From positions 29,946,001-30,010,000 of the forward strand of contig OZ004607.1 in assembly GCA_963924565.1 (NCBI GenBank): 64,000 nt of DNA, in the 5' to 3' direction. Shown piece after piece: positions 7,261-44,314 of this stretch. The position numbers and the translations under genes are program-made. Source of the DNA: Ascidiella aspersa. Its lineage: Eukaryota. The notes below the pieces were generated by a model, which did not search any database, had not been told where the DNA came from, and saw nothing but the letters and a program-made list of their open reading frames with translations. The first letter of the stretch is position 1. Every line of letters starts with the position of its first letter.

Positions 7261-8591
7261 CTGAATTCAACCTCGTGTGTGATAAAGCGTGGCTTAACAT
7301 CACTTAAGTTTGTCGGCATGTTATTCGGATCTCTTATTAGTGGATACATTGCTGACCGATTTGGAAGACGTCCGACATTTCTCATATTTACTGCTTGGCA
7401 GTTTATTGCCGCTTCTATTTTGAGTTTTTCAACCGGAGTTGTTTCATATGCATTCCTTTTTCTGTAAGGCGGTTAAGGAAACTTAGTAAACTATAACATT
7501 GCCTCTGTAATAGGATCCGAAATGATGTTAAAATTCCGCCTATGGATCTATTTTGTTGCTCTCATGGGTTGTTCAGTAGGATACATGACACTAGCTCCAT
7601 TAGCTTACTGGTTACGCAATTGGCGTTGGTATCTAAGATTCTGTGGATTAACTGGCATTTTCTATATTTCTTACTACTGGCTAATCGACGAAACTCCGCG
7701 CTGGTTGCTTGCATCTGGTAGGGCGGGCGATGCAAAACTTATTTTTTAAAAGATTGCCAGACTTAACAAACGCAACTGCAGAATGAGGAATGACTCATCG
7801 AAAGTAATACGCCCATTTCATTTACTGTCTTCCAAACAATTATTAATATTGGAAAGGAACCCATTTTGCTCTTTAGATTCTCTATTACGACCTTTATCTG
7901 GTTTAATATAAGCTTCATGTATATTGCTCTTGGCCTAAACACCAATAATTCAAGTGGAAGCCGTTTTTTAAATCTGTTTCTTTCCATTCTAACAGACCTT
8001 GCAGGATGCTTTCTCTTCTTGTTGTGCGAACGCAAGCTTGGAAGAGTTAACTCGTACATTTTTCCGACAGCCCTCTTTGGACTTTCCATGATTATAACTT
8101 GCTTCGTGCCAGAGAGTCAAGTGGTCATTCTCATATCGCTGAACATGTTTGGCAAGGCTATGGTGTCGTCTGCCTTCGCTATTATTTACGTTCATGTTTT
8201 GGAGGTGTTCCCAACCAAAGCAAGACAAACCGTGTTGTTTGTTGTCGTGGCAGCTGGGAAAGTTGGTGCAATTCTGGCACCGTTTCTCATTTATGTCGGT
8301 GAAGAAGGCGACATTCTAATCCCCTCTTTAATTGTTGCAATCCTGGTCTTGCTGAGCGCTTTTAGTTGCTCGTTTTTACCCGAAACCAAGGGAATCCCGC
8401 TGCCTCAAACAGTAGAAGAAGCAAAAGCAATGCCTCGAAAGCAATGGTGTGCTTCGGGACAGTCCGCTAGATCTCCGAATTTACAAGTGTCACCAGAAAT
8501 CAATCTTCTGAAAAACTTAAGGGCAAGAAATATAATGGATTTATTGTTTTTATCCCTAAAAAGCTTTTTATCAAAGTCCAATAAGCCTTGA
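6923..8591 (+). pseudogene. SLC22-family transporter pseudogene, intronless
   Basis: Starts MVDLKDLGYYDKHLSLLWFLSAIPNG then frameshifts; in-frame TAA stops; ORF fragments 7279-7467 (ADRFGRRP), 7522-7749 (IDETPRWL) and 7866-8591 (EVFPTKAR, LPETKG) tile the full transporter. Confidence 0.92.
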
Positions 8592-14902: not shown

Positions 14903-16534
14903 ATGACGAAGTTAAAGGATTTAGGCTACTATGAAAGGCGTCTCTGCTTGCTTTTGTTTTTCTCGTCGATTCCAAATGGATTTACAACGTTCCAAGTTCT
15001 AATTCTGCATTTCACCCCACCACATAGATGCAATGTTCTGGAACAAAATCAGTTGGAAGGGCAAACCACCATTTACACAAATCACAGCGGAAACATCCAA
15101 ACGGAGCAGACTCTTAATTTGACAATACCTTGGGAAACTATTGGCGGTAAAACATCAAGAAGCAAGTGTTTTCAATTTGAATCTTTTAACAGTTCTGCAG
15201 CCAACAGAACAAAGATTCCTTGTAGGTCGATATACTACGAAGGAATCGAGGTTTCAGCTGTAACGGAATTTAACCTTGTATGCGACAGAGCGTGGCTGAG
15301 GCCTGTGCTTACTTCAGTTCAATTTGCCGGCATGTTAATCGGAGCTCTCGTTAGTGGTTATCTTGGCGATCGATTTGGTAGGCGCCCGATTTTTCTTATA
15401 TTTACTGCTTGGCAGTTTATGGCACTTTTTATGTTGAGTTTTGCAAAAGAGGTTTGGTCATACGCGATTCTTTTTCTACTAAGTGGGATAGGTAGCCTTG
15501 TGAACTACAATGTAGCAACTGTAATAGGCTCCGAAATGACAACAAGGAAATACCGCTTGTGGATGTATTTTGTCCTACTCATGGGATATACTGTAGGCTA
15601 CATGATGCTGTCACCATTAGCTTTCTGGTTGCGCGATTGGAGATGGTTCCTACGATTTTGTGGATTAATTGGTGTTCTCTATACTCCTTACTACTGGTTA
15701 ATCGATGAAACACCACGCTGGTTGCTTGCATCTGGAAGGGTTGTTCAGGCCAAACACATTTTCCAAAAGATTGCAAGATATAACAAAAGCAGTTGTGAAA
15801 CAGTAAGTTCCTTGATTGAAAGCAAATCGCAAGAATCATTTACTGCTATTAGAACCATTATAAATATTGGAAAGGAACCCATTTTGTTGTTTCGATTTGC
15901 TATTTTGGCTTTAATATGGTTTGATATGGGTTTTATGTATTACGCTTTGGGCTTTAGTACTAACAATTTAAGTGGCAACAGATTTTTAAATATTTTTCTA
16001 TCAAGCTTGGCAGAATTGGGCGGAGGCCTTTTGTTTCCAGCGTGCGAACGAAAGTTTGGAAGAGTTAACTCGTACATTTTGCCAACAACGCTTTTTGGAC
16101 TTTCCATGATTGTGACTTGCTTCGTGCCAGAGAGTCAAGTTGCGGCCCTAATTTCGTTAAATATGTTTGGCAAGTGTATGGTGGCGCTTTCGTACGCAGT
16201 GGTTTATGTTCAAATCACAGAGGTGTTCCCGACCAAGGCAAGGCAAACTGTGCTGTTTGTTGTTGTCGTAGCATCAAAAGTTGGTGCAATCCTGGCACCG
16301 ATCCTGAATTACGTCGGAGAAGAAGGCAACACTCTAATACCTTCTTTAATTATAGCAGCCATGATGTTACTGAGCGCTTTTGGTTGCGCGTTTTTGCCCG
16401 AAACCAAAGGTGTCCAACTACCTCAGACCGTCGAAGAAGCAAAGGCAATGCCGAGGAAAAAATGGTGCAACTCGGGGCGGCCTGCTGGACTATCCACAGT
16501 AGAACTTTCACAAGAAATGCGACAATCAACCTGA
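14903..16534 (+). CDS. SLC22-family organic ion transporter, 543 aa, single coding exon
   Basis: Uninterrupted ORF with TM1, Cys-containing extracellular loop (PHRC...SKC...IPC...NLVC), GDRFGRRP, IDETPRWL, EVFPTKAR and LPETKG motifs typical of SLC22/MFS. Confidence 0.95.
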   Translation: MTKLKDLGYYERRLCLLLFFSSIPNGFTTFQVLILHFTPPHRCNVLEQNQLEGQTTIYTNHSGNIQTEQTLNLTIPWETIGGKTSRSKCFQFESFNSSAANRTKIPCRSIYYEGIEVSAVTEFNLVCDRAWLRPVLTSVQFAGMLIGALVSGYLGDRFGRRPIFLIFTAWQFMALFMLSFAKEVWSYAILFLLSGIGSLVNYNVATVIGSEMTTRKYRLWMYFVLLMGYTVGYMMLSPLAFWLRDWRWFLRFCGLIGVLYTPYYWLIDETPRWLLASGRVVQAKHIFQKIARYNKSSCETVSSLIESKSQESFTAIRTIINIGKEPILLFRFAILALIWFDMGFMYYALGFSTNNLSGNRFLNIFLSSLAELGGGLLFPACERKFGRVNSYILPTTLFGLSMIVTCFVPESQVAALISLNMFGKCMVALSYAVVYVQITEVFPTKARQTVLFVVVVASKVGAILAPILNYVGEEGNTLIPSLIIAAMMLLSAFGCAFLPETKGVQLPQTVEEAKAMPRKKWCNSGRPAGLSTVELSQEMRQST

Positions 16535-16551
16535 ATATTACTAGTTACGGA

Positions 16552-16734
16552 CAGGTTATTTTTTAAGGTTTGGTTTGGGTGACCGCTAAGTAGTTTTAAG
16601 AGACCGCAAGTGTTTCATTTAAATACTAAAAAATAGCCATATTTGCTTAAACGAATTATTTATTATTTTTTGGGAAACCGCTGGAGAAATTTGTAGGACC
16701 GTTTCAGTCCCCCAAAACATCTTAAAAAACACTG
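16552..16734. mobile_element. Short hAT-type MITE just 3' of the SLC22 stop codon
   Basis: Imperfect TIRs CAGGTTATTTTTTAAGG / TCTTAAAAAACACTG; 8-bp TSD GTTACGGA (16544-16551, 16735-16742); second copy at about 30186-30342. Confidence 0.8.
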
Positions 16735-19700
16735 GTTACGGATATTGATTAGTGGTTTAAATGATTTGGTAGGGATTAGCCCAATCACCATTTGCGCTTG
16801 ATCGAAAGCCATTTACAATTGAAAAGAACGCAAATTAAAAAATGATGATATTTCTTGCCGCGAGTTGCCGAGAGTTCCGTTCAATGTTGGACCTTTTTCT
16901 TCTGTTCGATTTAACTAACTAATCCTAACCAAAAACTAAAGCGTATCTTGTGTAATGTCTTATTAATATATTGCCTCGCAAATGTGATGTCAAAATACAG
17001 ATGCAAGTAAAGGGATCTTTTTATATCATATATTAAAAACAATAAATTACGGTAAAAATGTTTAGGTCTGGCAAGAATATTAAAACTAAAAAATCACAGG
17101 GGTTTTCTTTCTTGAGTTAAAGCACATATAATTATATACACTTTAGATATAGAGTTCTACTTATAAGAGTATACGTGCACTGGCTCGTATTTCTGACCAC
17201 GCTTTGGAGGGATTTTATTTTCTTAGATTTCACATTACGAGAAAAGCAACCCATTGCGGTTTCGTAAGTTCTGCTCTTTGTTGTATAGGCCTATACGTCG
17301 ACGGTCACAATTGTACATATTGAGGACTGACGAGGTATAGAATAAAATTTGTACTATCTGATTGCTCTTTAAACGTCAACTAAGAAAACACATTATGTTA
17401 TACTATGGGTAATTAGGCAAGTTTCCTGTGATTTATAAAATTTATATTTCACAAATTCTCACCGTTTTTCGATAAAAATGTGGTTTACGTGGGTATTTTA
17501 ATATCATTGCAGAGTTCAGTCATTCGAAAACACAATTTGACAATACGATATATAACGCAATATTGACAATAACACCATGGGGAAACCAGGACGCCATGCC
17601 CTTCAAACTATTTTATTCTATTCTTTATTAACTTTAACTATAGTAGGCTATATATAAATATAAAGAAAAACGCGTTCAACACTTGAAGAAGAATATTGCA
17701 GAACTAAAATTATCCCTTTTGACCAATTCTTTGGCGTTTCTATATTTAAATGTTTTGCGTGCGAATCAGTGCACTTCTTATAAAACAAATTTCGCTATAC
17801 TTCGGTATAACACGCAGCGAGAGATTAAACTTTGATTGCACCGACGGCCAGCAAAACCAGCAAATATTGCCTACTGGCGGCGGTGTCGACTATAAACGCT
17901 GTTTTTTTTGCACTTTGTCTGATATCCCCCGCACACTTGCAGCGAGCTTGCACACTTCAGCAAACGCGTGGTAGGAATACCGCACCAAACAAAGTAATTC
18001 AACATATTTTAGGCTTCCCTCTGAAGCAACAGCGTCCGATGCAAACAAGGGTGTTTCCATTGTAATCGACTATTATCCATTCGTAAAGGAAGCAAGACAT
18101 TTCCATCCTGCAATTTTTGCATATCATGCTATAGGTCCCATGTATTTGTAAGCGAACGCCACGTTAGGGCACATAGCTGGATATCAACAAAACTCTATAC
18201 GTGTAAGTTGTAAGGTTTGACAGTTGGCGATATTTTAATGAAACGTAAAGCATAAAAGGTGACAGCCGAACTGTAGGGCAGGATGACCACAAGTAAGTCA
18301 CTGTTTGGAATTTTCGAAAGCAAAATGTGATTTTATTTAAAATCGCAGCCCCAAAACCTTTGCCGCACATAGTTTAAAGATTAGTGACGGTCCGAGGTGC
18401 TATTGTAACTTAACACAATAATGACTGTTATATTAAACGCTGCTCATTTACAGATATCATTAGGATAAGTAGACTAGTTGAGAAACCACTCTTAGAAAGA
18501 CTAGTTGAGAAACCACTCTTAGAGCACTCAATGAAAGTACAATGAACATAAAGCACGGAATGGTAACCCTGCCTATGAATGTTAGCCGCACGTGGTACGA
18601 AAAGAAATTTTAAGTTAAAAACTGGGAACTTAGACAGCTTTATACCAAATGAACAGCACCGGAAAAGCGACGACTGATCAATTTGCGCTTGTTCAATCGA
18701 AACACGTGGCAAAGTGGCCACTTGAGGGTCATCGACCTATAGAAAACAGCATTGTGACCGCTGTAGTATCAACAGAAAATAACACGTCAGTGTGCCGGTG
18801 GTACCATAATACTACCGTGGTATATTGTCCGTAAAGCATAAGCTTAGTTTACTACTGTGAAACATTTTATGCGTTCAACTTGTAAATTTTGGTGGTAAAA
18901 CATTTGTTTAGCTTACGAGATATGAATAATAGAATCGCAGTGCAATGGCGGCTTTTAGTATAAGCTTTCGTCAGTTGTAATCTGAAGCCTTTCATTTCCC
19001 TTTGCAAGCGTTTCAAATACTTTAATTTCCGATGCTTTTGCCGTTCCAAAGCTATCTATAACTTATAACGTCAAACGCTCAACAAGCGCCTGTTTTTCGC
19101 ACCAGCAATTGTTAAGCTTTAAGGTATGTTATGGAACCACTGTTGTATGAATGCAGCGGCAACGTTTAACTACTTTACCCAACGTTACATTGCAAATCAT
19201 GCTAAATAATGAAACACGATGTATTTTAATCAGAACTGCACAACATACGGCCCGCGCCAGCAAACCTTCCAGCTCGGGAGTCTCATTTCAAATTCTAGTT
19301 TTAAGCTCGTGTAGCATGGATTAACGTGTGGAGGATTTTTCCCACGCCAGAGTACGCGGAGTAGTTTGTTGCGGGGGCTAAACACAGTGAGTTTGTAAAA
19401 ACACGGCCACAAACATGGTCGAATCCACGAGGACGACCGAACCATACCCCTCAAACTATATTTTTGGTAGAACTATATGGAAATGTTTTTGTTCGTTTTA
19501 AGGCAATCTATTCAGACCAAAAGCGCCATGCATACTATGGAATCTTGCACAGTGCGACTCACAAACTTACAAATTTATGGTAGATAGACTATATGAATGT
19601 GAGAAACATGCGGATCCCTTTTAAGTGCCTTTCATCTGCAAATTTGCGCACGAGTTCGCTGTAGAACTATGCACTTTGCAATGGTTATATATAACTTCAG

Positions 19701-22393
19701 TATGCTGCCCGCGAGGTTAATTCTGCTTGTTGCGGCATTTTACCATTTAATGTTGTGCAGGTCAGGTTCTAATAATTCTCTGTAATGTATGGTTAAAACA
19801 TTTTACAACGGTAAGATTATGCTTAATTTTATTAGTTTCTACAGCAATTTTGTACATCACGTTTTTGCCCTTTTTATATAGTTTTTAAACTTTTTTACAA
19901 CAAAACTACGAAATCTGCGGAACATTAGCACAGCAAACGTTCGATGTGCTAACGTTATGCAGGAATGGTCAGCGAGAGCCTATTCTGGAGCAGCCGCTTG
20001 TTGATGTTAAACAAAACTGTCTACTGAAATTACTGTCAAATTAGTTCGGCTAAAGCTGTTTTTTCGTTTTGCTACATCCAGTTCTGGGGTCAAATTGGAA
20101 CGTTCTAGCCATAAGGCAATCAGTCGCCAATTAAACATATTATGTTTATTTTAAGTCAAAAACCGCCGATTAAATAATCGTCAGTGGAAATTACGTTTTC
20201 GGCTCGACTGGCAATAAAAACAATTACTGTCGCGCTTTTATTTTTATGGCATGATAACTAGAGCTAATCGTTATAAAAAGTATCGCGTGTGAGTTAATAA
20301 TTATGATCTTTTAGGTAAACCCAGCTTTAGGCTGTGGATTGTATATACCAGTGGTTTACAAATTGCGGGCCATGGCCCAGTATAGTGGGTCACGAGGACA
20401 ATTTCAGTGAAGCATAAAGCTATATGAAAATATCGCGGCATATGTTTCAATAAAATCATTTTTAGCTTATCTAAAGTTTCATGCGACTATACGAAACATT
20501 ATTTTATCCACCAGGGTTCAGGAAGCTAAACAATCCGCGGGTTGGATCCGACCCGACAATAAATGTCATCTGGCCCGCCACCTCTTATACAAACTATAGG
20601 CACGAGGCCATTTCTCATATTTTTTTGGCTATTTTCAGTGCGTAAACGTAAAAATTGTTGACTACAATTTTAGGCCAAAACAACGAATTTTTTTCTTTAC
20701 TGCATTCTTGAAACGCATTAGAAGCAAGGGCAGACAAATACTGACAATTAGAAAGCTATTGTTAATCAATTTGCATTAGCCGTTACCAGAGGTGAGAAAT
20801 ATTGACAAAACCAATTATTTTTTTAAATAATATAACAGATTAAAGATAGGATATATTTAACGCCTCTATGAGTCGTTTGGTATTCTTCCGAATTTTTTAT
20901 TCTCTACGCAGTTTTTCGACTATATTGGCGTAAAGTGTAGACTATAGTCTATGTACATCAGCCAGCCTGGTTGATATATTTTATTTCGCTGATGGACTAA
21001 ATGGCGCACAAAAACAGTTTACGGTACATGGTTGGCCACGAACTGTTTTCTGAAAAAATCGGCCAACGAAATAAAAAGTTTGGGTCCACTGGTATATACG
21101 AAAGCCAACGTACTGAAATAAAGATAAAATAACTTAACGTTTGGTTAACAACAGCACCCTGATGCTTATCACTTATTAAAACAGCACTGGCGTATTGTAT
21201 TTTTGATTTGCTTACGATGTTGTACTCCACCACGGCCTATAAATATTCAAAACTTTTTTATGGTGGTTTATATGAAACACAGGTTTTACCGCCACGGATT
21301 TGAATACAGACAGACAGAAAAAACCTAGAAAGTCGACTCACAAAATACGTGCATTAAATCCTTCCGCAATAGCCAATGTCGTCACAGCATAAACAAAAAG
21401 GAATCGTGGTTTCCTGCAGTTTACTCATCGATGTAGTTGAGCTCCACTGATGATCGTTGTCAGAGGGTTCTTTGTACTGGATATACTGCAGCGACGGCTA
21501 GCTTTATCCTTAAGCTATAATAGCTGATCTATTTCAATAGTTTAATACGATTTAAAAGCAGGTTAAAGTGTGCTCGTATTAATTATTACCCTGAAAAGTT
21601 TAGCTGATATATGTTGCCAAACATTAGTAGCCTACATTGTTTACATCACAAAAACGATTTTTATCAAATACTAGTTACTGCTTTTTTTGAAAAGCCTTGA
21701 TAAATTCTGTATGTAGTGACAAACACGAAAAAAAAGTTTTGACTTGTACCATTATGTTAATGTTTATTAGGCATTGTGACATCAAGGTTAGAAATAACCG
21801 TCCTACACCTAATACCGTAACTACATACGACGAAAACGTTACAGTTTTTGTTTTGATTGGTGTAATAAGTCTTGAATTGACAGAATGTTAGCACAGGAAA
21901 GCTTCCATAAATCGGAAATAAGCACAATCTTATTCAATAGGATATGACAACCCATGAACCCATGTATGATATGAGCAATGAGGGCAAATGAAATACACAC
22001 TAAGTGAGTGAGGCTTTGGTAGGCAGTTTGGTTAGCCTTTTATATAGACAGCACTCACATTTGAAATACTATAAACAAATTGGCATTTTCAGCTACCCAG
22101 CTTTCCGATATAACTTTATTATATAACAAAAGCAAGGAATCCTATTTTGTCATGATTTGTTTAACCTGTTCGAACAAAGGCTGTTTCTGCTTGTGGTATG
22201 CTGCTAACAGTCGTACTCAAGATGTAAAGTCGAATGGCGATAAAACCTATACATGATTAAAATGTTAAAAGCAGCTTTGCTGCTATAGGTTTCTGCGGAT
22301 TAGATTTAAATGTGTTTATGTTTGTTCTAGAAAAAGTACCTTGTTCATTAAGTTCCTTAAAACAACTAAATTCCACCATTAAGGAGGTGAAAG

Positions 22394-24049
22394 ATGGCAA
22401 CAGAGGAAAAGCTTGGGTATTACGAAAAGCGCCTGTGCCTTCTTCTGTTTTTGTCGTCCATTCCGAATGCTTTCACCACTTTTCAGATTTTAATCCTTCA
22501 ATTTATACCTTCTCATCGCTGCAACGTATTTAACCAAGTGGACAATTATACCGGTTCCTTTAAAAACTCAAACTTAACTTTGGAAGAAGCGCTAAACCTC
22601 ACAATACCCTGGGAAACGAGAAATAATGGGAAAATTTCAAGAAGCAAGTGTTTTCAATACGATTCTCGTCGCAATTATTCTCAGGAAAACCGAACGAAGG
22701 TTCCCTGTGAATCAATGTACTACGAAGGAATTGAGGTTTCAGCTGTGACTGAATTTAACCTCGTATGTGACAGAGCATGGATGAGACCTGTATTTGGATC
22801 CGTTATGTTTGTGGGAATGATGCTCGGATCTCTTGTGAGCGGATATCTTGCTGACCGATTTGGAAGGCGCCCGGTATTTCTTATATTTACGGCCTGGCAG
22901 TTCATTTCGGTTTTCTTGCTCAGTTTTGCGCCCGATGTTTGGTCTTATATTGTGCTATACTTGCTTTGCGGCATCGGAAACTTGGTAAATTACAACATCG
23001 CTTCTGTTATAGGATCTGAAATGACAACCAAAAAATATCGCCTGTGGATGTACTTTGTCCTTCTGATGGGATTTTCGGTCGGGTACGTGTTGATGTCACC
23101 ACTCATATACTGGTTTCGCGACTGGCGCCTGTTTCTCAGATTCAATGGTTTAATTGGACTTCTCTATATTCCTTACTACTGGTTAATCGACGAAACACCA
23201 CGCTGGTTGCTGGTGACAGGCAAATTAAACGAGGCCAAAGAGATTAGGCAAAAGATTGCTAAAATTAACAAAAGCCATGGCGAAAGTTTGGATTTTCCTC
23301 ATGAGGTTGATGATCAGAAGTCGTTTTCTGCTACACAAACCATTGCTAAGATTGGAAAGGATCCCGTTTTGTTGTTTCGTCTTGCTATTTCGTCTTTTAT
23401 GTGGTTTGTCCTAGGTTTAATGTATTTTGCTCTGGCATTTGGTACCAACAACCTTAGTGGAAATCGGTTTTTAAATATATTTTTGTCAAGCTTTACAGAT
23501 TTGGGGGGAGCGCTTTTATTTTTTGTCTGCGAACGTAAGCTGGGAAGAGTCAACACTTACATTTTGCCAACTACGCTCTTCGGACTCTCCATGATCGTAA
23601 CTTGTTTGGTACCAGAGAGTCAAGTGGCAGTTTTAATATCGCTGAATCTCTTTGGGAAGTTAATGGTATCGTCGTCGTACGCGATTGTTTATGTTCAAAT
23701 TATGGAGATTTTTCCCACCAAAGCCAGACAAACCGTGATATTTATTGTTGTGTTGGCATCACGAGTTGGTGGAGTTCTGTCACCGGTTATGATTTACGTC
23801 GAGGAAGAAGACATTAATCTGATACCTTACCTAACTGCTGCCTTCCTAGTTTTGCTTAGCGCTTTTGCCTGTGCTTTTTTGCCTGAAACCAAAGGAACCT
23901 CGCTACCTCAAACGGTGGACGAGGCAAGGACAATGCTGAGAAAGCAATGGTGCAGCTCTGGGCAGACCAACAGAAAAGCATCCCCATCCCTGGAAGTAAC
24001 ACACGAGTTACAGAGTTCGCTTTGGAACACAAAAGAACCGGAAATTTAG
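22394..24049 (+). CDS. SLC22-family organic ion transporter, 551 aa, single coding exon
   Basis: Uninterrupted ORF colinear with 14903-16534; ADRFGRRP, IDETPRWL, EIFPTKAR and LPETKG motifs. Confidence 0.95.
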   Translation: MATEEKLGYYEKRLCLLLFLSSIPNAFTTFQILILQFIPSHRCNVFNQVDNYTGSFKNSNLTLEEALNLTIPWETRNNGKISRSKCFQYDSRRNYSQENRTKVPCESMYYEGIEVSAVTEFNLVCDRAWMRPVFGSVMFVGMMLGSLVSGYLADRFGRRPVFLIFTAWQFISVFLLSFAPDVWSYIVLYLLCGIGNLVNYNIASVIGSEMTTKKYRLWMYFVLLMGFSVGYVLMSPLIYWFRDWRLFLRFNGLIGLLYIPYYWLIDETPRWLLVTGKLNEAKEIRQKIAKINKSHGESLDFPHEVDDQKSFSATQTIAKIGKDPVLLFRLAISSFMWFVLGLMYFALAFGTNNLSGNRFLNIFLSSFTDLGGALLFFVCERKLGRVNTYILPTTLFGLSMIVTCLVPESQVAVLISLNLFGKLMVSSSYAIVYVQIMEIFPTKARQTVIFIVVLASRVGGVLSPVMIYVEEEDINLIPYLTAAFLVLLSAFACAFLPETKGTSLPQTVDEARTMLRKQWCSSGQTNRKASPSLEVTHELQSSLWNTKEPEI

Positions 24050-32600: not shown

Positions 32601-35600
32601 ATGAGTGTGCTTGGTCAGTCGGTCAAAGCGTTGGAGGCGATTGACTATCACTGTGGAGGGTCAGCGATACGGGTCATCAGTGGTGGACTTCCAAAAACCC
32701 AAGGCGACTCGTTTGCCGAGAGGCGGGATTTTGCTAAGAACAAACTGGACTACATTGGAAAGCATGTCAAATAGTTTGTGTCTGCTAAAGACAGATTCAG
32801 ATTCAATTTATTTTTGTGCATGTTTGCAAACATCGAAAAAACAAAATAACATAAATAATAACACAAGGACAGCGAAAGGACCATTCGGTCTTCGAGTCGA
32901 GCTGCCCATCAAAAATAAATAAATTTAGTGGCAATATTGAAAGTTACAATAATTGGAAACAAAAAGTGCGTAGATAAAAAACATGTAGATTTTAACGGTT
33001 TTAAATAAATTTTAGAAATAAAAAATAGATACGAAAACGCAATGTAAAACTAGCAAAACAACGATAAGGTCAGAAAGTGCTATACAACGGTTACGTACTG
33101 CAGGATTTATTTCAAATCTGTGCCTTCGCACGTGTCTGTGCGACTGCGCCTACGGCTGGCAATTATTAGTAATAGTAATAAAATTAGTGGTAGATAATAA
33201 GTAAAATGATTGTTGACCAATTTGTAAACCTCGGGCAGCGTCTGCTCCGTTGTTTACATTTAGTTGTGACAGTGAGGCCTATCGTAAAAAATAAATCAAG
33301 TGCACTACTATTACTTAAAATATTGATATTTTATCGATTGACGTTTACTTGGACTTTGGTTTTTGTTTAAAATGGCCCAAATTTTCTTTTTTCCAAAATG
33401 GTTCTGAATAGCAAAAACTCCACGAGGCAAACAGATGTTTTTCAACTGTTTCAGGGTCCTCTGCTTCGAGCCGCGGGGTTACCGGTGCATGACTGTTGTC
33501 ATGCCGATAGCGCACGACGAAGAGGCAGCGGATGCAGCGGTGGTGTTTCTGGCGGCGACCATGTACCTACCCATGTGCGGGTAGGCCACCATCTGCTACG
33601 TAAGGTCGGTCGCTTTATTTGAAGGATTAAAGTGCATTCACGTGGAGAGACGCTTCGTACCAGTGTTTCACTACATTGATAAGAAATTGCAATTTTTGAG
33701 AATATACTCAACGAAATACAAACGAATTTTGTGTGAAATTGGAAATCAGGATATATATCGGCTATTAGCGGTAATCGACATCCCTCAACAAAGTAGGCTA
33801 CATGGGATTTTGGGAGGGATATGTCCTTTCTTGGAATTTCTACCATATTAAAAACGTGGAATTATCGGTCAGCGCTAGTCGTTCGTGGTATTGGCTGTGT
33901 GTTGCCGACTTGTACACAATAAACACCGCTCTGTATCAGGAAAATATGTTCGCTAGTCAGTGACATTATGGTCTACGCGCAGTTAAAATCGTTTAAGGCT
34001 ATGAATATGAGCAAAGCTTTGTCAAAACATAACCTCAAGTCAAAGCTATGCTGATTTGAAGTTTAAGAAACTTTATGCGGTACTTATTACAGATGGTTGC
34101 TGGAACACGGCATCGTCAAGGCGACTGAGCCTGAGACAGCCCTGACCATTCAGTGCCCGGTAGGTCTTGTGAAGGTCTTCGCCGAGTGGAGCAACGGCAA
34201 AGTGGGCAAGGTCCGATTTCACAGCGTACCGTCGTACACACTGGTTTCAGGTACATTTTTTACGTAGAAGGTTTTCGTGGCTTCTGAATTGAATCGCCAG
34301 TGGACAAGATTTTACCTTGACCGCTTTTAATGTCGGATTTTCGTACCTGTTTCCAAAATGTGACATACTTAAATTTATTAAAGCAACTCAGTGTCGCTAA
34401 TCAACCGTACTTATTTTTTTAGAATAGCGACAAATAAAACACTACATAAATCACTTCTATTTGTCAGATTTGGAATTGGTTATATCGCCGGGCAGAAAAA
34501 TCACCGCGAATGTAATCAACAGCGGTGAAAATTACGCCATTGTTTCTCAAACCCAATTAGGGCTGGTTATCGAAAACGAAGACATCCAGAAATTAATTGC
34601 AGTCGCAAACAAGATTACTGCGAAGGCTGATACCTTGGTAAGTTTATCAATGGAAAGACGATGGTTCTCTCTCGCCACCTTGTGGCAACTGGACCTAAAC
34701 ATTGGTTTGACGTAGAGTAATTTGGTTGCAACGCAAGACTTATCTGCTTTCGTTCTTGGGTCAATGTTGGCCAAGCGTAGGACCATGTTATCAAATTAAG
34801 AAAATTTTCCTGCAACCATACTTGAGTTCATTGATTCTTACTTAAAACTTTCTATATCAACAGCGAAGAATTTATCCTAAAAGTTAACCATTACAGCTCA
34901 TTGATGTGGCATGAATAACAACTTAGATTAAAAATAGGGGATTTGATTAAAAAGGTTAAAAAAAACTGAAGCACTGTCCAAGATGTTTAAACCTGAATGA
35001 CTTTATTTTGTAGAAAGTAGTATAGACTTACCTATGTGGCTTGTAAAAATTGATGACTAAATCTAATGAGCGACTTGGCCATAGGACACACTATATAAAT
35101 TAGGTATAAAAGGAAAGGTCGAAGCCGGGTAAAGAGCTGCAGGAAAGCCGCACAACCTGCTGTAAATGTTTGCTAAAAAGCTTGACACCTTCGAAGATAG
35201 TACACCGAAAAGCCATCGCAGACTCGCCGAATCTGTCGATCGATGATGCAAGCAGACCAAGCCAGAAAAACAACTGGCCTGCAGTGAGGTTCGAACTCAC
35301 GACCTCCTAAAGCAACTTCCGAGGGGCTAGATCACAGATGTTATTAAACACATATGTTTGTGTGTGTCTTTCATTGATTGATACGGACTGATGATCCCCC
35401 AGTGTGAAGTTGCTTGTACTAACAAAATGTGCAAGTATTGGCGCATGGTTGTTTCTCGACTCGCTCCTCTCTGAGCCTGCATAGCTCAGTTGGTAGAGCG
35501 ACGGCCCCGGCTTGACCGGAGGTCGTGAGTTCGAACCTCACTGCAGGCCAGTTGTTTTTCTGGCTTGCTCTACCTTCGAAGGTGCACGGTATATTAGGGT

Positions 35601-37866
35601 TTTTCGATACTATCGAATTGACACACAAAACGTAAGGATTTAGGCCAGGGGTGTCCAACTCAAACATGCCGGCGTGCCAATTTTTATCTTACAACTTCTT
35701 TCCGTGCCAAAGTTTCGTAACCGAACCAATTCTTTTTAATCATAAAAGCGCTTTTTTACCAAAAATAAGAACGTTTGTTTAAACTTGAAAAAAAACTGTC
35801 TAGTAGAAATGTGCATCACTACATCAAAGTGTCTCTCGGTGAGCTGACTTTTGTTTCTTCACACCAAGCTATATAATATTATGTGAATGCTAGCCTCCAC
35901 ACAGTATAATGTTACTATATCAAAACTAATTGTTGGTTGTCGTGACTGCCGCGATTGTTTTTTTTTGTGAACCAAACAATGGCAAGTGGCTGTATAACAA
36001 ACTTAGTGAGCTTTTTTGGCAATTGGCTAAATAACAATTTTATTATTTTGGGGAGAGGCCATTTTTTATTAGCCACATTTGGCACGCGTGCCGCTTCTGA
36101 TTTAAGCTATAGTTCTCCATTCAATACAGTGATTCCAACCTTGAAAGGTAAATTTATCAAAAAATAGTAGGTTAACAGCTGAGGTTATTAGCTAAACATT
36201 AAGGCCTACAACCTGAAAAAACAACAAGTTTAAACCAATTTTAATTTGATTTAGTTTGCTTAGGCTACTTGGGCATGGTAATGACGTAATTTTGTATAGA
36301 ATGGAATCGCGTTACTTTTGGTCAAAAATGTTGGTTATCGCTATTGGAAAAAAATGTCAAGTATCTGACATCCATAGTAAAATTATCTGCCCGATGTTAT
36401 TTAAAATAGTTTTTATAGGTTGACTCGGAAATATGTGGAACGATCATTACGAACGACGACATTACGAACGACGAGAACGGTAGAACACACCTCGTCGTGT
36501 ATGAGGACTCGATGGTTGGTATTTAGGTAAAAAAGTAACTTTTGTGTAGCTATAGCACCTTGAATGATTGAAAAAATTGTCCTAGAAAAACGGATATATG
36601 TTTTTAAGTCCCCACACTTGGCAGTTTTAAATTAAAAAGGTATGAAGTGACATGCTTACTTTTTAATATTTTTCCAGAAAGCTCATGACAAACCTAAATA
36701 TTAGAAAGAGTAATTCGCCCAATTTACCCTTTAGTGCAAACTTAACATTAGCTTGAAACTTCAATGTCGCAATTTTTTCAATGTCGCAATTTAAATCTGC
36801 TGATTTCACTAAAATATACACTAATATTTTAATTAGGGGTTGATGGACCCCCTAAAACTAGTTCACGGACCCCTAAGGGGTCCATGGACCCCAGTTGAAG
36901 AACCCCTGACTTATTTGCATTGTGTTTGTCAGATAAACAGGGGCTTTTGTGGCTCCGGGTCCGCAGCGCGGACGACATTGGATTACTTTTTCGGCCATTT
37001 GAAGTTGGGAGAGTCGCGAAATTACGCAAGTGTAATGACGATGCAAGGGTAAGTAATGGTTCGCGACATATCAGGGCAAAGCTTGCGCCAGCATCATTAA
37101 CGTTTTTTAGCAGTCGTGTTTATTTTTTAGCTTTGGTTTTCCGGCGTTATAAACTTAAAACAAAGACTAAACGGTAGCAGATCAAAAAGTCCGTGAACAG
37201 CTGAACTGGCAGCTTAGCTGCTCAAAATCATAGCATTAAACTGGCATTTCGATGGTTTCAAAATCCATTGCGCAAGACCTGTTCATAAAAACAGAAGTAG
37301 TGCCTGCGTTGCTTTTATATTTGAGTTTTAAAAATAGGTCCTATACTTAAAACAATTTACGCCAAATTTATCTGAATTGATTTGCCGAAAATACGGTGGG
37401 TCTCAATGTTGCAACGAATTGTTCGATGATGTTATAGAAATAATTACTAGCACATTGGCACCTGGGCGTGGTTTGGGCTACTTTCAAAAATAATATTCAA
37501 GCAGTTCGTTTGAACCCGTTCTTGGATTTACATATATTCGACCCGATTGTTGCCATTACTATTAACTTTGAGTGGAGTTAAAATATTTCAACGAGTTGGC
37601 TGTTTACTACAAACCCACCCCCAAACAATGATCGCCACCGTGAATTAATTTGCATTACCGTAAGTGCCGGACGCCAAAAAGGCCTAAAGCACAAAGGTTA
37701 AATAAATGCTTTGTTGATTTTTTCCGTAGGACAACAGCTACACCGATTCGTGCAGTTAAACTGGAAGGCAGGGATGCGGCAAATAGAAGGCCGTGCTTTT
37801 TGCACTGGAAAGCATCAGTTTGTATTGGAAGCGGATGATCCTCTTGTGGATGGATTCCCAGTGTAA
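32601..37866 (+). pseudogene. Proline-racemase-family (L3HYPDH-like) pseudogene; exons 32601-32761, 33455-33604, 34093-34250, 34468-34637, 36419-36514, 36933-37048, 37730-37866
   Basis: Exons 1-6 match the minus-strand paralog in length (161,150,158,170,96,116). Lesions: GC at donor 1, in-frame TAG at 33582-33584 (paralog GAG), 8-nt deletion frameshift in exon 7. Confidence 0.9.
35475..35549 (+). repeat. tRNA-like module inside a dispersed repeat (pseudo-tRNA or SINE-like head), in an intron
   Basis: Acceptor stem GCCTGCA/TGCAGGC, D stem GCTC/GAGC, T stem GTGAG/CTCAC with TTCGAAC loop; anticodon arm non-canonical. Related pieces on minus at about 35200-35310, 38043-38212 and 45345-45435. Confidence 0.75.
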
Positions 37867-38808: not shown

Positions 38809-41800
38809 TTACACAAGGAATCCATCCACAAGAGGATCATCTGCTTCCATTATAAACTGATGCTTCCCTGTGCAATAAGCACGACCTTCTATTTGTATCA
38901 CAACGGCGTCCCTGCCTTCCAGTTTAACTGAGTGTATCGGTGTAGCTGTTGTCCTAAAAACCAAAAATTAAAAAAAAAATGAAACACACATTTATAACGT
39001 TTGTTGGTCCCTATTTTTTCTCCCCTTGTTAGCCCCTTTTCTGTAATTTTATACTGAAAATTAAAAACCTGGAAAAGCTTTCGCACAACTGTGCTTCATC
39101 GGATTTTCTACTTTGGCCTAATGAAACGTTACGCAAAATCGTGTCAAGATTTTAATACAAATTGTTGGTTATTAGTGTCACCTGATTTCCAGATATTTAA
39201 AAACAGTTCTTATTTAGTGAATAACTATTAAACCAGATTACACTAACCGCGCTTCTTTTACAGTTGTATTGATTATAAACGTTGAAAATAGAAGAACTCA
39301 TGGGTGATGCTGAGTCAGCGGTTTTGTGGGCGGACCATTACTCACCCTTGCATCGTCACCACGCTTGCGTAATTTCGCGATTCCCCCATCTTTAGGTCGC
39401 CGAAAAAGTGGTCGAATATCGTCCGAGCTGTGGTTCCCGATCCACAAAAGCCCCTGTTTACCTGAAGAACACCAAGCAAATCAATCGGCTACGAAACGGC
39501 GATCAAGTTGGCTAAGCCAGAGGTTCTTCAAACTGCGTCGCGACACCCTGGTGCGTCGTTTCAGATTTGTTTAAGGGCGTCACAGAACTATCTCCCCTCG
39601 TATCTGACATCAGATGCAATAAAATTTACCTTTAATGGTAGAAATTAGGTCATGGCATAAATTCATATAAGTCAGAGACAATTTAGTCAGGAGCTATACA
39701 GGAATTAGGAGTGTAACCTGTACATCTTTAATTGAGGTAAGTCTGAAACTGAAACAAATGGAGAACTTTCCATATAAAGGATCTATGGAAAAGCCGTTTT
39801 TGATCTCCGGCTAAATACCAACCATCGACACTCCACATACGACGAAATGAGTTCTACCCTCTTTACTTTGACCCACGCTGTCGTTCGTGATGATTGTTCC
39901 GCACATTTCCGGAGAAATCTAAACGAATATATATTTCCAGTGCGCGTCATTTAAATAAAAACAAAACGTTAGAACTATGGTAATGCAGTATGCTTTACAG
40001 CAGTATGCTTTACAGCAGTATGCTTTACATTAATATGTATATACGATTTTATATTAGTAGAAATTGGTATGCAAAATTAATACTTATAAACAATAATGAT
40101 AATAGCTTTTTGAAATTCCAAAGGGGCAAGTGTCACCCCTTGCTCCCCGTCGGGCGCTCATGGGCGGAATGTATTTGTCCTTATATTTTGCCCGAACACA
40201 CACAATATAACATAAATAAATTTAGAAATGCAATAATATTAAATAACATTTTTATTAAGCACGGTGTACAAACATCGATGGCTACAGGATGTTTTGGTCA
40301 GCCCTTAATAAAAAGTAGGATTCACATTTTTACCCTTTGTTCGAATCTTAGTTTTATGATAGTATACTGAATCGTCACATTGTAAACGTTATCTGTAAGT
40401 TCTATGCCGTTACCATTCTTTGTCATCCAGTGACACGGCAATGCAGCCAATATACACTGGAGAAAAAACAATGTCTCTCCCAAACAACGAACTTACCAAC
40501 TTATCGGCCTTCTCTGTGATTTCGTTCGCAATTGCAGTCATTTTCTGGGTGTCTGCTTTTTCGATTTCCAGTCCGAGTTGATTTTGAGAAACAATGGCGT
40601 AATTTCCGCCGCCATGCATAACGTTCGCTTTGATTTTTTGGCCCGAAGAAAGGGCGATTTCCAAATCTGGCAAAAAGTTGTGGGAATCGTTAAAACCAGG
40701 GGTGGGCAACGTGCGGCCTTTTTACATTTTTCGTGCGGCCCTTCACCTTCTTCCAGCTAATTTTCCCTAAATAAGGCTATGAGTGTGCACCATGTTCGGA
40801 CTTTGCTCTATCAGCTTCCTGTTTGAAGTGCGATGTAACCCATAAGCTACAGCGCTACACTAATGCTGTTGAACTCGAATAAGAAGCATCTATTACAAAA
40901 CAATCTTCATTCATAAAGTTTACTTGTATCACGTTGTTATGATAAATAATTGTTTTGACACAACTACACTTGTTTAGTATAGGGTCAATGTGTAACAGAC
41001 TTTTGCCACGCATATATACTGAGATGTTGTGTTTAACAGCTGGTTTTGAATTTTGGCTGTTAATTAAATTGTCAGTACGAGAAAGGCGTCATTGGAAACG
41101 TAGGAAAAGTTATTTCCGAATCACAAGTAGACAGCACTGACAAAACGCCGTAGTCGCAGCCTATAGTAGCTCATTAGTTTTTTTCTATTAAAAGCTGAAA
41201 ATATGAATTAGTGTTTATCTGATGTGCGGCTCCCTGTAAGCATTACATTTCCTAACTGGCCCTTGTTAAAAAGGCTGCCCAACCCTGGTTAAAACTATCT
41301 ATTTCTACGAAGGGTTTTTCGTTGTTTGCCGCATAAATGTTAGTGACAATAGTGATTCGCAAATTGAATTTGTGCTGTTTATTTTTTAGTTCAGGTTGAC
41401 ATAGTTCGCATCTTTTTATTTGTCATAACTTATGACTCATAAGATTTATACTAACATTCATTTAAAAATTGGTCATTCATCGTATAATTGTAGTTTTATA
41501 CATAGAAAAAATACGTCAACGTTAATTTAGCGCGCAAGCTTTACCAAACACAATTCCGGACATTGTTATTGTCATCCCTAGTCTTTGTATTCATTTTTCA
41601 AAGATGTCTATAAGTGTAAAATTAGGACATAGTGCAATTCGAAAACGTGGAAGCCGCAGATAAAAGTCTTTAACGGGCAGTTGCGATAATAATTAACCTG
41701 GAGCCAGTGGGTACGATGGGACGCTGTTAAATCGGACCTTGCCCACTTTGCCGTTGCTCCACTCGGCGACTACCTTCACCAAACCTACCGGACACTGAAT

Positions 41801-43054
41801 GGTCAGGGCTGTCTCAGGCTCAGTCGCCTTGACGATGCCGTGTTCCAGCAACCATCTGGAAAAAAGCGACGACTTTATTATTTCACTTTTTTTCTGTGGA
41901 CCTCAGGTTGATCCAATGTATGGATTTAGCCTTGTTTTCAGTAGTAATAGACCGATGTTGGTTGGACTAAAAACAACCGTGTAGTTTAACACGACTACAT
42001 TTTTCCTTAAGTAACATAATTTTGAAAAAATACATACAAAGCTATTTACCGTTTACCGTTGCCGAAATGACAATTTTTTCGGCCGACACTTGACTATACT
42101 ACGCGCTCTTTTTGTTGACTTTAAGAGGTTCAAAGTCGAATATTTTATTTGACCAGCTTGCATTGTCTTAGCACTGTGCCGATGTACCTATATTTCGGCT
42201 AATGACGGAAGATGACAATTATATAGTATAGGTCTACAAGATTAATTCTTGATTGCTTGGTGTGTTTGTTTCTATGTGACCTCAATCAAACCTTAGGCCT
42301 CGGTACTTGGCGTTTTTACCAGCCCGTGGACAACCTTTCACACAACATAACTGACCTTACATAGCAGATGGTGGCCTCCCCGCACATAGGAAGGTACATG
42401 GTCGCCGCCAGAAACACCACCCCTGCATCCGCTACATCCTCGTCGTGCGCTATCGGCATGACACCAGTCATGCACCGGTAACCCCGCGGCTCCCAGCAGA
42501 GGACCCTGAAACAAAACAGTTGCTCAGTTTTCCTGGAGCATTACACATCTCACTTTTGACTGCGGCGGTGCGCCTCGAGTGAGATTCGAACCGACGTCCG
42601 GCAAAAAAATAGCTAGAAAAAAAATAGTATGGCAAAGCTGGTCACTAAAGTAAGAAACAAACAACACTAATTTCAACTGTAATTTAAGTTATAAAGGTTT
42701 GTTCTCAAAATAAAAATGAAGTGAGAAGATTATTTAGCCGCCCTCTTCTTGCTGTGTTAAAAATATAGCTAATAAGTTGCCAAATGTTTCTCATAAAAGA
42801 CGCGAAAAACTCTACTATAAAATGGTTCTTGAAGCCGTTGCGAAAACAAGCCTATCGTGACCACGTGGCAATCGACTCCGCCAAGCGTAATACTTTCGAA
42901 TATAGTCCATCTTGCTCTTGACAAAATCCAGCCTCTGTTGAAAGGAGTCGCCTTGGATCTCAGGTAGACCGCTCGTGATAACCCTCATGGGTGAACCACC
43001 GCAGTGATAGTCGATGGCCTCCAGCGTCTTGACCGACCGACCAAGTACACCCAT
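38809..43054 (-). CDS. Proline racemase / hydroxyproline epimerase / L3HYPDH-family enzyme, 331 aa, divergent active site; exons 43054-42894, 42505-42356, 41855-41698, 40666-40497, 39918-39823, 39461-39346, 38953-38809
   Basis: All introns GT-AG, phases consistent, 996 nt open. Family landmarks: DYHCGGSPMR, EPRG, YLPMCG, IQCPVGLV, VRFNSVPS, GGGNYA, CGSG and C-terminal EADDPLVDGFLV. Confidence 0.92.
40697..41287. mobile_element. hAT-type MITE in intron 3 of the intact racemase-family gene
   Basis: Ends CAGGGGTGGGCAAC / GCTGCCCAACCCTG; TSD GTTAAAAC (40689-40696, 41288-41295). Confidence 0.85.
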
Positions 43055-44314
43055 CTTTATTTCTGTTTACGATTTTCGAGCTGTTGACCGTAAATAATTT
43101 CTAATCAGTCTAAAATAAGGCGGTTATCCTCACTCTGTGACACTTAGGAAATCCTTTGTAATATCTATGTGCCTATATAGTTGTAAGGCAGCGGATTCCG
43201 AACTAGGGTCCGCGGACCAACTGGGGTCCGTACAGCAGTTTTAGAGGGTCCGCAATGAGAATTAGTCTCTAAAGCTTTAAATCATTTTCAGAGGGTTTGC
43301 AATGTACAGCAATAATTGTGATTCGATTATAAAGCTTTCTCGGGTACATTGATGAGTTAATTGCAGCAAAACAAGTGCACCCATTTATATATTTTGTTTT
43401 GTTTCGGTAAAATAGTAAATAGGTTTAAGACAATGAAGATTTTTTATGTCGGATTTTTTAAAACATTTCCTTTCCTGGCTTCAACTTATAACTTGCTAAG
43501 ACAGCTGCACTGGCTATCAGCCTACAAGAGCAAGTGTAATAGTCCCAGACCTGGCATCGAACATAAGACCAGTAACATTTTATTTCCAATTGAATAAATC
43601 TCTACCTTCTGTCGAAGTAGGCTACCTAAATTACACAACTCCACGTGCTGCAACCTTAATTGAAAAACTTGGATAGCCGTTCTGCAAGAAAATGTTGACC
43701 TAGCGAAACGAAAAAATTTCGGTCCACTGCCTCGCAGTGCTCATATGCCTTGTTTGAAATTTTAGACTGAAAGGTAAATATTACTACTTCAAAGATTTGC
43801 TCATGGTCAATACAGTTTTTAAGACTCTGTTGACATTAACGTGGCGATCAATGTAGGTACAGAAAAAAAAAACACGCTGATTCATTTATTTCATGCACAT
43901 TACAAGACTAATTTACAAAACATCATATATACATAAGCGTACACATTAGGTTTCCACTTTTTGCCAAACAACTACCTTCGTGCCGCAAGGTCATGTTGAA
44001 CGATTAAAATTCACTTGGTACTCTTTCACAAAAAATCTAGACCGACACATGAACAAAACAGCAATATGGGGCAGGAACTTGCGTAAGATGGCATGAATAG
44101 GCTTTACATAAATTTTACTGAAACTGCGTAGATATACCGTTGCTAACTCGTCAGCAATGATATTCTAGTACGCGGTCAGTTAAATAATAGGCAATTGAGA
44201 AATGTTTTACACAGATCAGAGCATCGTTTATGCGACGGTTGTTTCGCACCTTTTTATCATTCTTTTATGCGACTAAAGTGTATACAAACGGGTGTAACTG
44301 ATGTGGCCTTTATA

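What the first reader, a model, noticed from the sequence alone, without database searches (positions are those of the whole stretch)
38809..43054. Animal proline-racemase-family enzyme with a Cys/Cys catalytic pair and a rewritten substrate pocket
Seen: the spliced 331-aa protein has Cys95 in YLPMCGEAT (MCGE at 42376-42387) and Cys251 in VNRGFCGSG (exon 6). Established: proline racemases and hydroxyproline 2-epimerases use two cysteines in MCGH and DRSPCGTG, whereas vertebrate L3HYPDH has Cys/Thr (DRSPTGSG) and is a trans-3-hydroxy-L-proline dehydratase. The scaffold here resembles animal L3HYPDH (IQCPVGLV, VRFNSVPS, DDPLVDGFL), yet His to Glu, Asp to Asn and Ser-Pro to Gly-Phe change near-invariant ligand-binding positions; HTGGEP also becomes HCGGSP and EPRGH becomes EPRGY. 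The paralog shares NRGFCGSG, HCGGS and EPRGY, so these are not sequencing errors and predate the duplication. Inference: a cofactor-independent racemase or epimerase for a substrate other than free proline, possibly an undescribed D-amino-acid or alkaloid-related activity in an animal.
Basis: partly seen in the sequence, partly recalled or inferred. Interest (0 to 1): 0.85.

Follow-up and report, generated by a model that had tools for sequence, protein, structure and literature searches.

The report
Divergent ascidian proline-racemase-family gene
This is an intact gene for an unusual sea-squirt branch of the proline-racemase enzyme family: it keeps both catalytic cysteines, but the two residues that normally hold proline's nitrogen are replaced, so it probably acts on a different, still unknown amino acid.

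Summary
On the minus strand, seven GT-AG exons (43054-38809) encode 331 aa with Cys95 in YLPMCGEAT and Cys251 in VNRGFCGSG. Six exons match Pfam PF05544 colinearly.

- **Not private to this genome.** Ciona intestinalis H2XL36 (331 aa, same intron positions) shares HxGGSP, EPRGY, LPMCGE, NRG[FY]CGS and GESRxY. It forms a 100/100 clade with the focal gene on a very long stem. A Styela clava protein also has MCGE, with GRGPCGSG.
- **Cys/Cys is normal in invertebrates.** Two unlinked canonical MCGH/DRSPCGSG genes exist in this genome.
- **What is unusual.** His to Glu and Asp to Asn replace the published ligands of the prolyl nitrogen. The closure-lock residues are also lost.
- **The paralog is a pseudogene.** It has TAG at the Glu codon, an 8-bp frameshift and a GC donor.
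- **Evidence of constraint.** dN/dS is 0.26, 4 of 4 coding SNPs are synonymous, and 19 conserved sites changed in both the focal gene and Ciona, against 5 and 3 changed in only one.
- **RNA support is weak.** There are few sense reads and no junction.

Most likely this is an active two-cysteine enzyme with a changed substrate. The function is untested. It is a new variant of a known kind.

The parts
42894..43054 (-). Focal gene exon 1 (ATG at 43054; carries YHCGGSP)
   Evidence: PF05544 positions 2-41, 27.7 bits
42356..42505 (-). Exon 2: EPRGYRCMT and YLPMCGEAT (Cys95; Glu97 replaces the family's His). MCGE lies at 42376-42387
   Evidence: PF05544 positions 44-90, 37.2 bits; Glu aligns to His in PDB relatives
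41698..41855 (-). Exon 3: IQCPVGLV, VRFNSVPS
   Evidence: 41.8 bits, positions 94-141
40497..40666 (-). Exon 4: MHGGGNYAIV (family consensus YGGAFYA)
   Evidence: 26.5 bits, positions 154-200; sense-oriented RNA reads at depth about 1.9
39823..39918 (-). Exon 5: MCGTII (family consensus LYGTI; the equivalent of human Tyr241 is Cys here)
   Evidence: no Pfam hit on its own (32 aa)
39346..39461 (-). Exon 6: VNRGFCGSG (Cys251; Asn247, Gly249 and Phe250 replace Asp, Ser and Pro) and GESRNY
   Evidence: RNA depth about 2.4
38809..38953 (-). Exon 7 with the TAA stop: GTTAT, DDPLVDGFLV
   Evidence: 31.4 bits, positions 288-324
32601..37866 (+). Tail-to-tail paralog, a pseudogene. All seven exons are recognisable: 32601-32759, 33456-33602, 34094-34249, 34470-34637, about 36426-36514, 36933-37046, 37731-37866
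33582..33584 (+). Paralog lesion 1: TAG stop exactly at the codon that is Glu97 (GAG) in the focal gene
37775..37785 (+). Paralog lesion 2: site of an 8-bp deletion relative to focal exon 7, shifting the frame

Best explanation
The locus is an intact, selectively maintained gene for a 331-aa enzyme of the proline-racemase superfamily. It belongs to a fast-evolving offshoot of the animal L3HYPDH-like branch. So far this offshoot is seen only in ascidians; the ortholog is Ciona intestinalis H2XL36 / XP_026695422. What is shown: the scaffold for cofactor-independent two-base proton transfer at C-alpha is kept. That covers both cysteines, the Gly-rich helix N-termini that clamp the substrate carboxylate, the equivalents of human Met103, Tyr192 and Ser275, and the Arg of xRGx. 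The two side chains that coordinate the prolyl nitrogen are exchanged (His to Glu, Asp to Asn). The residues that lock the closed state in human L3HYPDH (Asp74, Tyr76, Tyr241) are replaced. Ser-Pro before the second Cys becomes Gly-Phe/Tyr. What is inferred: one acidic and one neutral hydrogen-bonding group remain around the amine site, but on opposite domains, so the protein still binds an alpha-amino or imino acid. With Cys/Cys it most likely racemises or epimerises that substrate, or dehydrates a hydroxylated form, and the substrate differs from plain proline or hydroxyproline. The two canonical MCGH/DRSPCGSG genes elsewhere in the genome presumably cover the ordinary hydroxyproline role.
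For: The gene model is intact with canonical splice sites, and PF05544 matches are colinear. The closest full-length relative is Ciona P0001, with the same length, intron positions and derived motifs, in a 100/100 clade. Of 69 columns at least 88% conserved in 36 canonical proteins, the focal gene keeps 45 and Ciona 47. Nineteen changed in both (7 to the same residue), against only 5 and 3 lineage-specific changes. This indicates a burst of change on the stem followed by conservation. Identity to Ciona is highest in the two exons that carry the catalytic motifs: 63% and 53%, against 30-49% elsewhere. dN/dS against the paralog is 0.26. All 4 coding SNPs in another individual are synonymous. The model of the Ciona ortholog has pLDDT 94.3 and keeps both helices after the cysteines. 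Its TM-score is 0.88-0.93 to t3HypD, L3HYPDH and ProR structures. Roles of the replaced residues come from the literature: His and Asp coordinate the prolyl nitrogen (PMC4113996 Fig. 5; PMC4364671 section 22), and the closure lock is described in PMC9309405. Two canonical copies exist in the same genome.
Against: No activity data exist for any MCGE-type protein. RNA support in this species is thin: with about 6% of one run read, a few sense reads cover exons 4-6, none cover exons 1-3, and no junction was listed. Losing both nitrogen ligands and the closure lock could equally mean loss of catalysis. The sister copy has died. The branch evolves roughly 1.5 times faster than the canonical tunicate genes. 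Pocket geometry could not be inspected, because the tools return no coordinates.
Confidence: 0.5

Rival explanations
1. It still performs one of the known superfamily reactions (4- or 3-hydroxyproline epimerisation, trans-3-hydroxy-L-proline dehydration, or proline racemisation). On this reading, the replaced residues tune kinetics or regulation rather than substrate identity.
For: Superfamily members with non-canonical active sites keep known activities: Ser/Cys and Ser/Thr pairs, and the MCGH His replaced by Ser (PMC4113996). One acidic group is still available near the amine site. In Ciona the gene lies about 9 kb from two OCD/mu-crystallin genes, a family that includes Pyr2C reductase, the step after t3Hyp dehydratase (PMC3958920, PMC4141209 listed).
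Against: Both nitrogen ligands, Ser-Pro and three closure-lock residues changed together and then stayed fixed. The genome already has two canonical genes for the ordinary reactions. The OCD linkage is not conserved here: this genome's OCD genes are on C4 and C5.
Confidence: 0.2
2. It is a pseudoenzyme. The fold is conserved and used for binding or regulation, without catalysis.
For: The nitrogen-coordinating His/Asp pair and the equivalents of the Asp74-Arg270 and Tyr76-Tyr241 closure contacts are lost. The stem branch is very long. Human L3HYPDH has a reported non-metabolic antiviral role (PMC10875296).
Against: Both catalytic cysteines, the glycines after them, and the Met, Tyr, Ser and Arg equivalents survive about 1.4 + 0.8 substitutions per site. 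Conservation peaks around the catalytic motifs.
Confidence: 0.15
3. The gene is on its way out. It is intact by chance but under relaxed selection and little or not expressed, like its broken neighbour.
For: The adjacent paralog carries three lesions. Only a handful of RNA reads were found and no junction. No focal-type ortholog was found for Ciona savignyi or Clavelina among the listed hits.
Against: The 996-nt ORF is intact with all 12 splice sites canonical. dN/dS is 0.26, and both copies carry similar numbers of derived changes (13 against 16), so the paralog's death is recent. All 4 coding SNPs are synonymous. Derived motifs are conserved with Ciona.
Confidence: 0.1

Closest known systems
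[quoted passage not shown]
   Same: It is the best solved-structure match by sequence for the Ciona ortholog (E=2.7e-55), with the same fold (TM 0.88). The scaffold motifs are shared (EPRG, MCG, IQCPxG, GG.xYA, xRxxxGSG, DxLxxGFL). The equivalents of Met103, Tyr192, Ser275 and Arg270 are kept.
   Different: The second catalytic position is Cys, not Thr. The equivalents of His106, Asp269, Ser271, Pro272, Asp74, Tyr76 and Tyr241 are Glu, Asn, Gly, Phe, Cys, Thr and Cys.
Canonical invertebrate L3HYPDH-like proteins (MCGH + DRSPCGSG), including this genome's own two copies at C1:27.59 Mb and C7:31.30 Mb
   Same: They share the Cys/Cys pair, a seven-exon layout with the same junction positions, and the same superfamily branch.
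   Different: Only 34-38% identical to the focal protein. They keep every canonical ligand-binding residue. The focal/Ciona clade sits on a stem of 1.36 substitutions per site.
Ciona intestinalis H2XL36 / XP_026695422 and Styela clava XP_039249424 (automatic name 'trans-L-3-hydroxyproline dehydratase-like')
   Same: Ciona: 331 aa, 43% identity, the same derived motifs and the same introns, so probably the ortholog. Styela: shares His to Glu, Ser to Gly, loss of the DRSP Asp, the aromatic residue five positions after Glu, and GES.
   Different: Styela has GRGPCGSG and keeps EPRGH. It groups with Styela's own canonical paralogs (98/97), so it may be an independent origin, although a single MCGE clade is not rejected (AU p=0.325). 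None of these proteins is characterised.
Proline racemase (T. cruzi 1w61) and bacterial 4-hydroxyproline 2-epimerases (4j9w/4j9x, 2azp)
   Same: They use the Cys/Cys two-base mechanism, have the same fold (TM 0.82-0.91), and carry Leu three residues before the first Cys (YL.MCG), as in ProR-type sequences.
   Different: The nitrogen-coordinating His/Asp pair is absent, and identity is only 20-26%.

Membership tests
Proline racemase superfamily (Pfam PF05544) | Colinear match to the family profile over the whole length | tested here: met
   Six of seven exons match profile positions 2-324 in order. Four exceed the 27-bit cut-off on their own.
Proline racemase superfamily (Pfam PF05544) | Two-domain DapF-like fold with a helix starting at each catalytic residue | tested here: inconclusive
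   Met for the Ciona ortholog P0001 (pLDDT 94.3; helices 89-101 and 251-263; TM 0.93 to 6r76). Not run on the focal protein, because the joined sequence has no reference.
Proline racemase superfamily (Pfam PF05544) | First catalytic residue in motif M-C-G-H: Cys present | tested here: met
   Cys95 in YLPMCGE.
Proline racemase superfamily (Pfam PF05544) | His of M-C-G-H (ligand of the prolyl nitrogen) | tested here: not met
   Glu97. His is 36/36 in canonical rows. Role taken from PMC4113996 and PMC4364671.
Proline racemase superfamily (Pfam PF05544) | D-R-S-P before the second catalytic residue (Asp is a ligand of the prolyl nitrogen) | tested here: not met
   The motif is N-R-G-F. Only the Arg is kept.
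ProR / 4HypE type (racemase or epimerase) | [quoted passage not shown] | tested here: met
   Cys95 and Cys251, both also present in Ciona and Styela MCGE proteins.
ProR / 4HypE type (racemase or epimerase) | Racemase or epimerase activity on proline or hydroxyproline | not testable with these tools
   Needs an enzyme assay.
Vertebrate-type L3HYPDH (t3Hyp dehydratase) | Cys/Thr pair (DRSPTGSG) | tested here: not met
   Cys251 aligns to human Thr273.
Vertebrate-type L3HYPDH (t3Hyp dehydratase) | Closure-lock contacts Asp74-Arg270 and Tyr76-Tyr241 (PMC9309405) | tested here: not met
   The equivalents are Cys65, Thr67 and Cys in MCGTII. Only the Arg is kept.
Ascidian MCGE subtype (defined here: HxGG[ST]P, MCGE, x-R-G-x-C-G-S, GES) | Shared derived residues and clade with Ciona H2XL36 | tested here: met
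   100/100 clade. 19 shared changed columns, 7 to identical residues. Shared intron positions.

The most novel reading that the evidence does not exclude
Ascidians carry a so far undescribed class of cofactor-independent Cys/Cys racemase or epimerase in which the amine-binding pair has been inverted (His/Asp to Glu/Asn or Gly). It acts on a non-proline substrate. Candidates are N-methylated or betaine-type prolines, pipecolate, or another cyclic or alpha-amino acid, any of which would give animals an unrecognised route to a D- or epi-amino acid. The same residue network may have been rewritten twice independently, once in the Ciona/this-genome lineage and once in Styela. Weak contextual leads only: an adjacent array of OCTN-like SLC22 transporters in this window, and OCD/mu-crystallin neighbours in Ciona.
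Probability: 0.3. Interest if true: 0.75.

Novelty: new variant of a known kind. Interest (0 to 1): 0.55.

Why it matters
[quoted passage not shown] Here a chordate lineage has kept, for a long time and at times in two copies, a branch in which the catalytic pair is preserved. The residues that define what the enzyme holds have been exchanged in a coordinated way, alongside two ordinary copies. That is the signature of neofunctionalisation. It gives a concrete, clonable candidate, with a Ciona ortholog in a laboratory model, for an unknown amino-acid stereoinversion or dehydration in animals. It also shows that automatic 'L3HYPDH-like' labels hide active-site variants. If the Styela form arose separately, it would be a natural example of a coupled residue network being rewritten twice.

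Tried and rejected
1. All searches used exon references or database proteins.
2. HMMER over 1.84 billion representatives with exon 2 gave only 7 hits, one of the same subtype.
3. A word-indexed search with P0001 alone found only itself. The profile of P0001 plus four exon rows found no further focal-type protein and not the focal protein itself.
4. The first exon-row alignment (A1) misplaced exons 4, 5 and 7 and was discarded.
5. The ESM Atlas look-up gave only generic proline-racemase clusters.
6. Conserved linkage to OCD/mu-crystallin was rejected: it is present in Ciona and absent here.
7. One origin against two for MCGE is unresolved: the free tree separates Styela, but AU p=0.325.
8. Using Ciona to show that the broken paralog carries more derived changes gave no asymmetry, 16 against 13, p=0.71. 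The exon-6 part was my frame error and is void.
9. Gene conversion as the cause of the high identity of exons 2-3 is not supported, because the intron between them is unalignable.
10. Literature searches for tunicate or MCGE-type members and for D-proline in ascidians found nothing relevant.
11. RNA: one run, about 6% read, with no junction reaching the listing threshold.
12. The exact look-up of P0001's contig failed. Its near-identical RefSeq form P0159 worked.
Full report
**Rules followed.** The spliced model was searched exon by exon, by reference. The joined 331-aa sequence was never sent to a search, fold or look-up tool. That joined step is left out, so structure prediction, word-indexed searches and the exact look-up were done on database proteins (mainly the Ciona ortholog) instead. 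They were not printed.

**1. The observation.** On the minus strand, seven exons with canonical AG...GT borders sum to 996 nt, giving 331 codons plus TAA. They are 43054-42894, 42505-42356, 41855-41698, 40666-40497, 39918-39823, 39461-39346 and 38953-38809. MCGE lies at 42376-42387, with Cys95 in YLPMCGEAT and Cys251 in VNRGFCGSG. HCGGSP, EPRGY, IQCPVGLV, VRFNSVPS and DDPLVDGFL are all there. Six exons match Pfam PF05544 colinearly over profile positions 2-324.

**2. The genome's other copies.** The 308.6-Mb assembly has four Pro_racemase loci.
- Two are unlinked, at C1:27.59 Mb and C7:31.30 Mb. They carry the canonical HTGGxP, EPRGH, MCGH and DRSPCGSG motifs and show colinear exon matches to tunicate proteins.
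- The fourth copy lies tail-to-tail with the focal gene, at window 32601-37866 on the + strand. It shares the odd motifs but is a pseudogene. It has TAG exactly where the focal gene has the Glu codon (33582-33584), an 8-bp deletion in exon 7 and GC for GT at the exon-1 donor.
- Introns of the two local copies are unalignable, so the duplication is old.
- dN/dS between them is 0.26, with dS 0.48.
- Polarised with Ciona, derived amino-acid changes are balanced: 13 in the focal gene, 16 in the paralog.
- Both copies were therefore constrained for most of their history, and the paralog broke recently.

**3. Relatives elsewhere.**
- HMMER with exon 2 against 1.84 billion representatives returned only seven proteins. 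The best was a 331-aa protein with HSGGSP, EPRGY, LPMCGEA, INRGYCGSA and GESRVY. It is Ciona intestinalis H2XL36 / XP_026695422.
- It is 43% identical to the focal protein, with exon junctions at matching positions.
- A profile search found no further member of this type, and the focal protein itself is not in the database.
- Styela clava XP_039249424 has CLTMCGEAT with EGRGPCGSG and LGES. It lies in a tandem pair.
- All other animal homologs retrieved keep MCGH and DRSP: sea cucumber, urchin, acorn worm, bivalves, gastropods, Octopus, corals, an anemone, sponges, Clavelina, Ciona savignyi and other Styela copies. Nearly all of them have Cys at the second catalytic position.
- So Cys/Cys is the ordinary invertebrate state. 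The unusual feature is the replacement of the ligand-binding residues.
- This genome's canonical copies group with Clavelina and Ciona savignyi (99/95) and are 57-59% identical to them. The organism is therefore most likely an ascidian of the Ciona/Clavelina side, and not Ciona, Clavelina or Styela itself.

**4. Phylogeny and constraint.**
- Focal plus Ciona H2XL36 form a 100/100 clade on a stem of 1.36 substitutions per site, with tips of about 0.8.
- The Styela MCGE protein groups with Styela's canonical paralogs (98/97). An AU test does not reject one MCGE clade (p=0.325), so one origin or two remains open.
- Of 69 columns at least 88% conserved in 36 canonical proteins, the focal gene keeps 45 and Ciona 47.
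- Nineteen of those columns are changed in both, seven to the same residue: K41R, H63Y, H97E, F152Y, D247N, S249G and F285T. Only 5 and 3 are changed in one lineage alone.
- That pattern is a burst of change on the common stem followed by conservation. It is not independent decay.
- Identity to Ciona is highest in the exons that hold the two catalytic motifs (63% and 53%).
- Four coding differences in a DNA run of another individual are all synonymous.

**5. What the replaced residues do** (taken from papers, not tested here).
- In liganded 4HypE structures, the carboxylate bridges the backbone amides at the N-termini of two opposing helices. The prolyl nitrogen is coordinated by the Asp of DRSP and the His of MCGH (PMC4113996 Fig. 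5; PMC4364671 section 22).
- In human L3HYPDH, Asp74-Arg270 and Tyr76-Tyr241 stabilise the closed state, and Met103, Tyr192 and Ser275 shape the catalytic site (PMC9309405).
- Mapping by alignment, these are kept: both Cys, the glycines after them, and the Met, Tyr, Ser and Arg equivalents.
- These are changed: His to Glu, Asp to Asn, Ser-Pro to Gly-Phe/Tyr, the Asp74 equivalent to Cys/Tyr, the Tyr76 equivalent to Thr, and the Tyr241 equivalent to Cys.
- Styela's MCGE protein has also lost the Asp74, Tyr76 and Tyr241 equivalents.
- An AlphaFold model of the Ciona protein is confident (pLDDT 94.3, pTM 0.92). It keeps the helices that start after each Cys and superposes on t3HypD, L3HYPDH and ProR structures at TM 0.88-0.93.

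**6. Mechanism.**
- Shown: the scaffold is intact, both catalytic cysteines are present, the carboxylate clamp is retained, the amine ligands are exchanged, and the gene is conserved and constrained.
- Inferred: one acidic and one neutral hydrogen-bonding side chain still face the amine site, but on swapped domains. The protein therefore probably still binds an alpha-amino or imino acid. It probably abstracts and returns the C-alpha proton through Cys95 and Cys251. Its substrate preference probably differs from that of the canonical copies.
- The identity of the substrate is unknown. I give this reading 0.5. Rivals are an ordinary activity retained (0.2), a non-catalytic role (0.15) and a gene in decay (0.1).

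**7. Expression.** One RNA-Seq run of the same species, about 6% read, gave a few reads over exons 4, 5 and 6. Their orientation fits a minus-strand transcript in a standard stranded library. No reads covered exons 1-3, and no junction reached the listing threshold. This neither confirms nor refutes a spliced transcript. It is the weakest point of the case.

**8. Context.**
- Upstream in the window lies an array of intronless SLC22 ORFs, closest to OCTN2.
- In Ciona the ortholog lies about 9 kb from two OCD/mu-crystallin genes. In this genome that family is on other chromosomes.
- Both are leads only.

**9. Novelty.** I found no paper on tunicate or MCGE-type members. Databases label them automatically as L3HYPDH-like. 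This is a new variant of a known kind, of moderate interest until an activity is shown.

Noticed in passing
window 7866-24049 (+): ORFs 7866-8591, 10527-10991, 14903-16534, 22394-24049: A tandem array of intronless MFS/SLC22 transporter ORFs, two full-length (543 and 551 aa) and two partial. The best solved relative is the organic cation/carnitine transporter OCTN2 (E=2e-68). It lies about 8.5 kb upstream of the Pro_racemase pair.
   Followed up: partly
window 42350-42513 and 41688-41864 versus 33447-33610 and 34084-34260: Exons 2 and 3 of the focal gene and its pseudogene neighbour are 91-93% identical with very few synonymous differences. The other exons are 74-84% identical, and no intron aligns, including the one between exons 2 and 3. 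This is not explained by a single ordinary conversion tract.
   Followed up: partly
window about 40641-41268 (intron 3 of the focal gene) and 43153-43300: High-copy repeats: word depth above 4,000-14,000 in the DNA run against about 40 for flanking sequence, with RNA reads on both strands and many loose ends.
   Followed up: no
L031:1-1352 and 10001-12483 (Ciona intestinalis AP043576.1): The Ciona MCGE-type gene lies about 9 kb downstream of two OCD/mu-crystallin (PF02423) genes, inside the span of a large ABC-transporter gene call. The linkage is not conserved in this genome.
   Followed up: yes
L032:10001-12924 and 21654-22924 (Styela clava OZ123515.1): Styela clava carries at least two near-identical MCGE/GRGPCGSG genes in tandem. 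Canonical copies (P0044, P0052) are on the same 25.4-Mb chromosome.
   Followed up: partly
protein P0003 (480 aa, source not looked up): An L3HYPDH-like protein with a duplicated N-terminal half, carrying EPRGQ and A-C-G-T in place of EPRGH and M-C-G-H. This is another divergent active-site variant, found with exon 2.
   Followed up: no
G000:C1:27592544-27596407 (L017) and G000:C7:31297186-31299036 (L018): Two canonical MCGH/DRSPCGSG paralogs, 64% identical to each other. The C7 copy is very compact, with introns of only tens of bases. Exact gene models were not built.
   Followed up: partly
I did not examine it.
   Followed up: no
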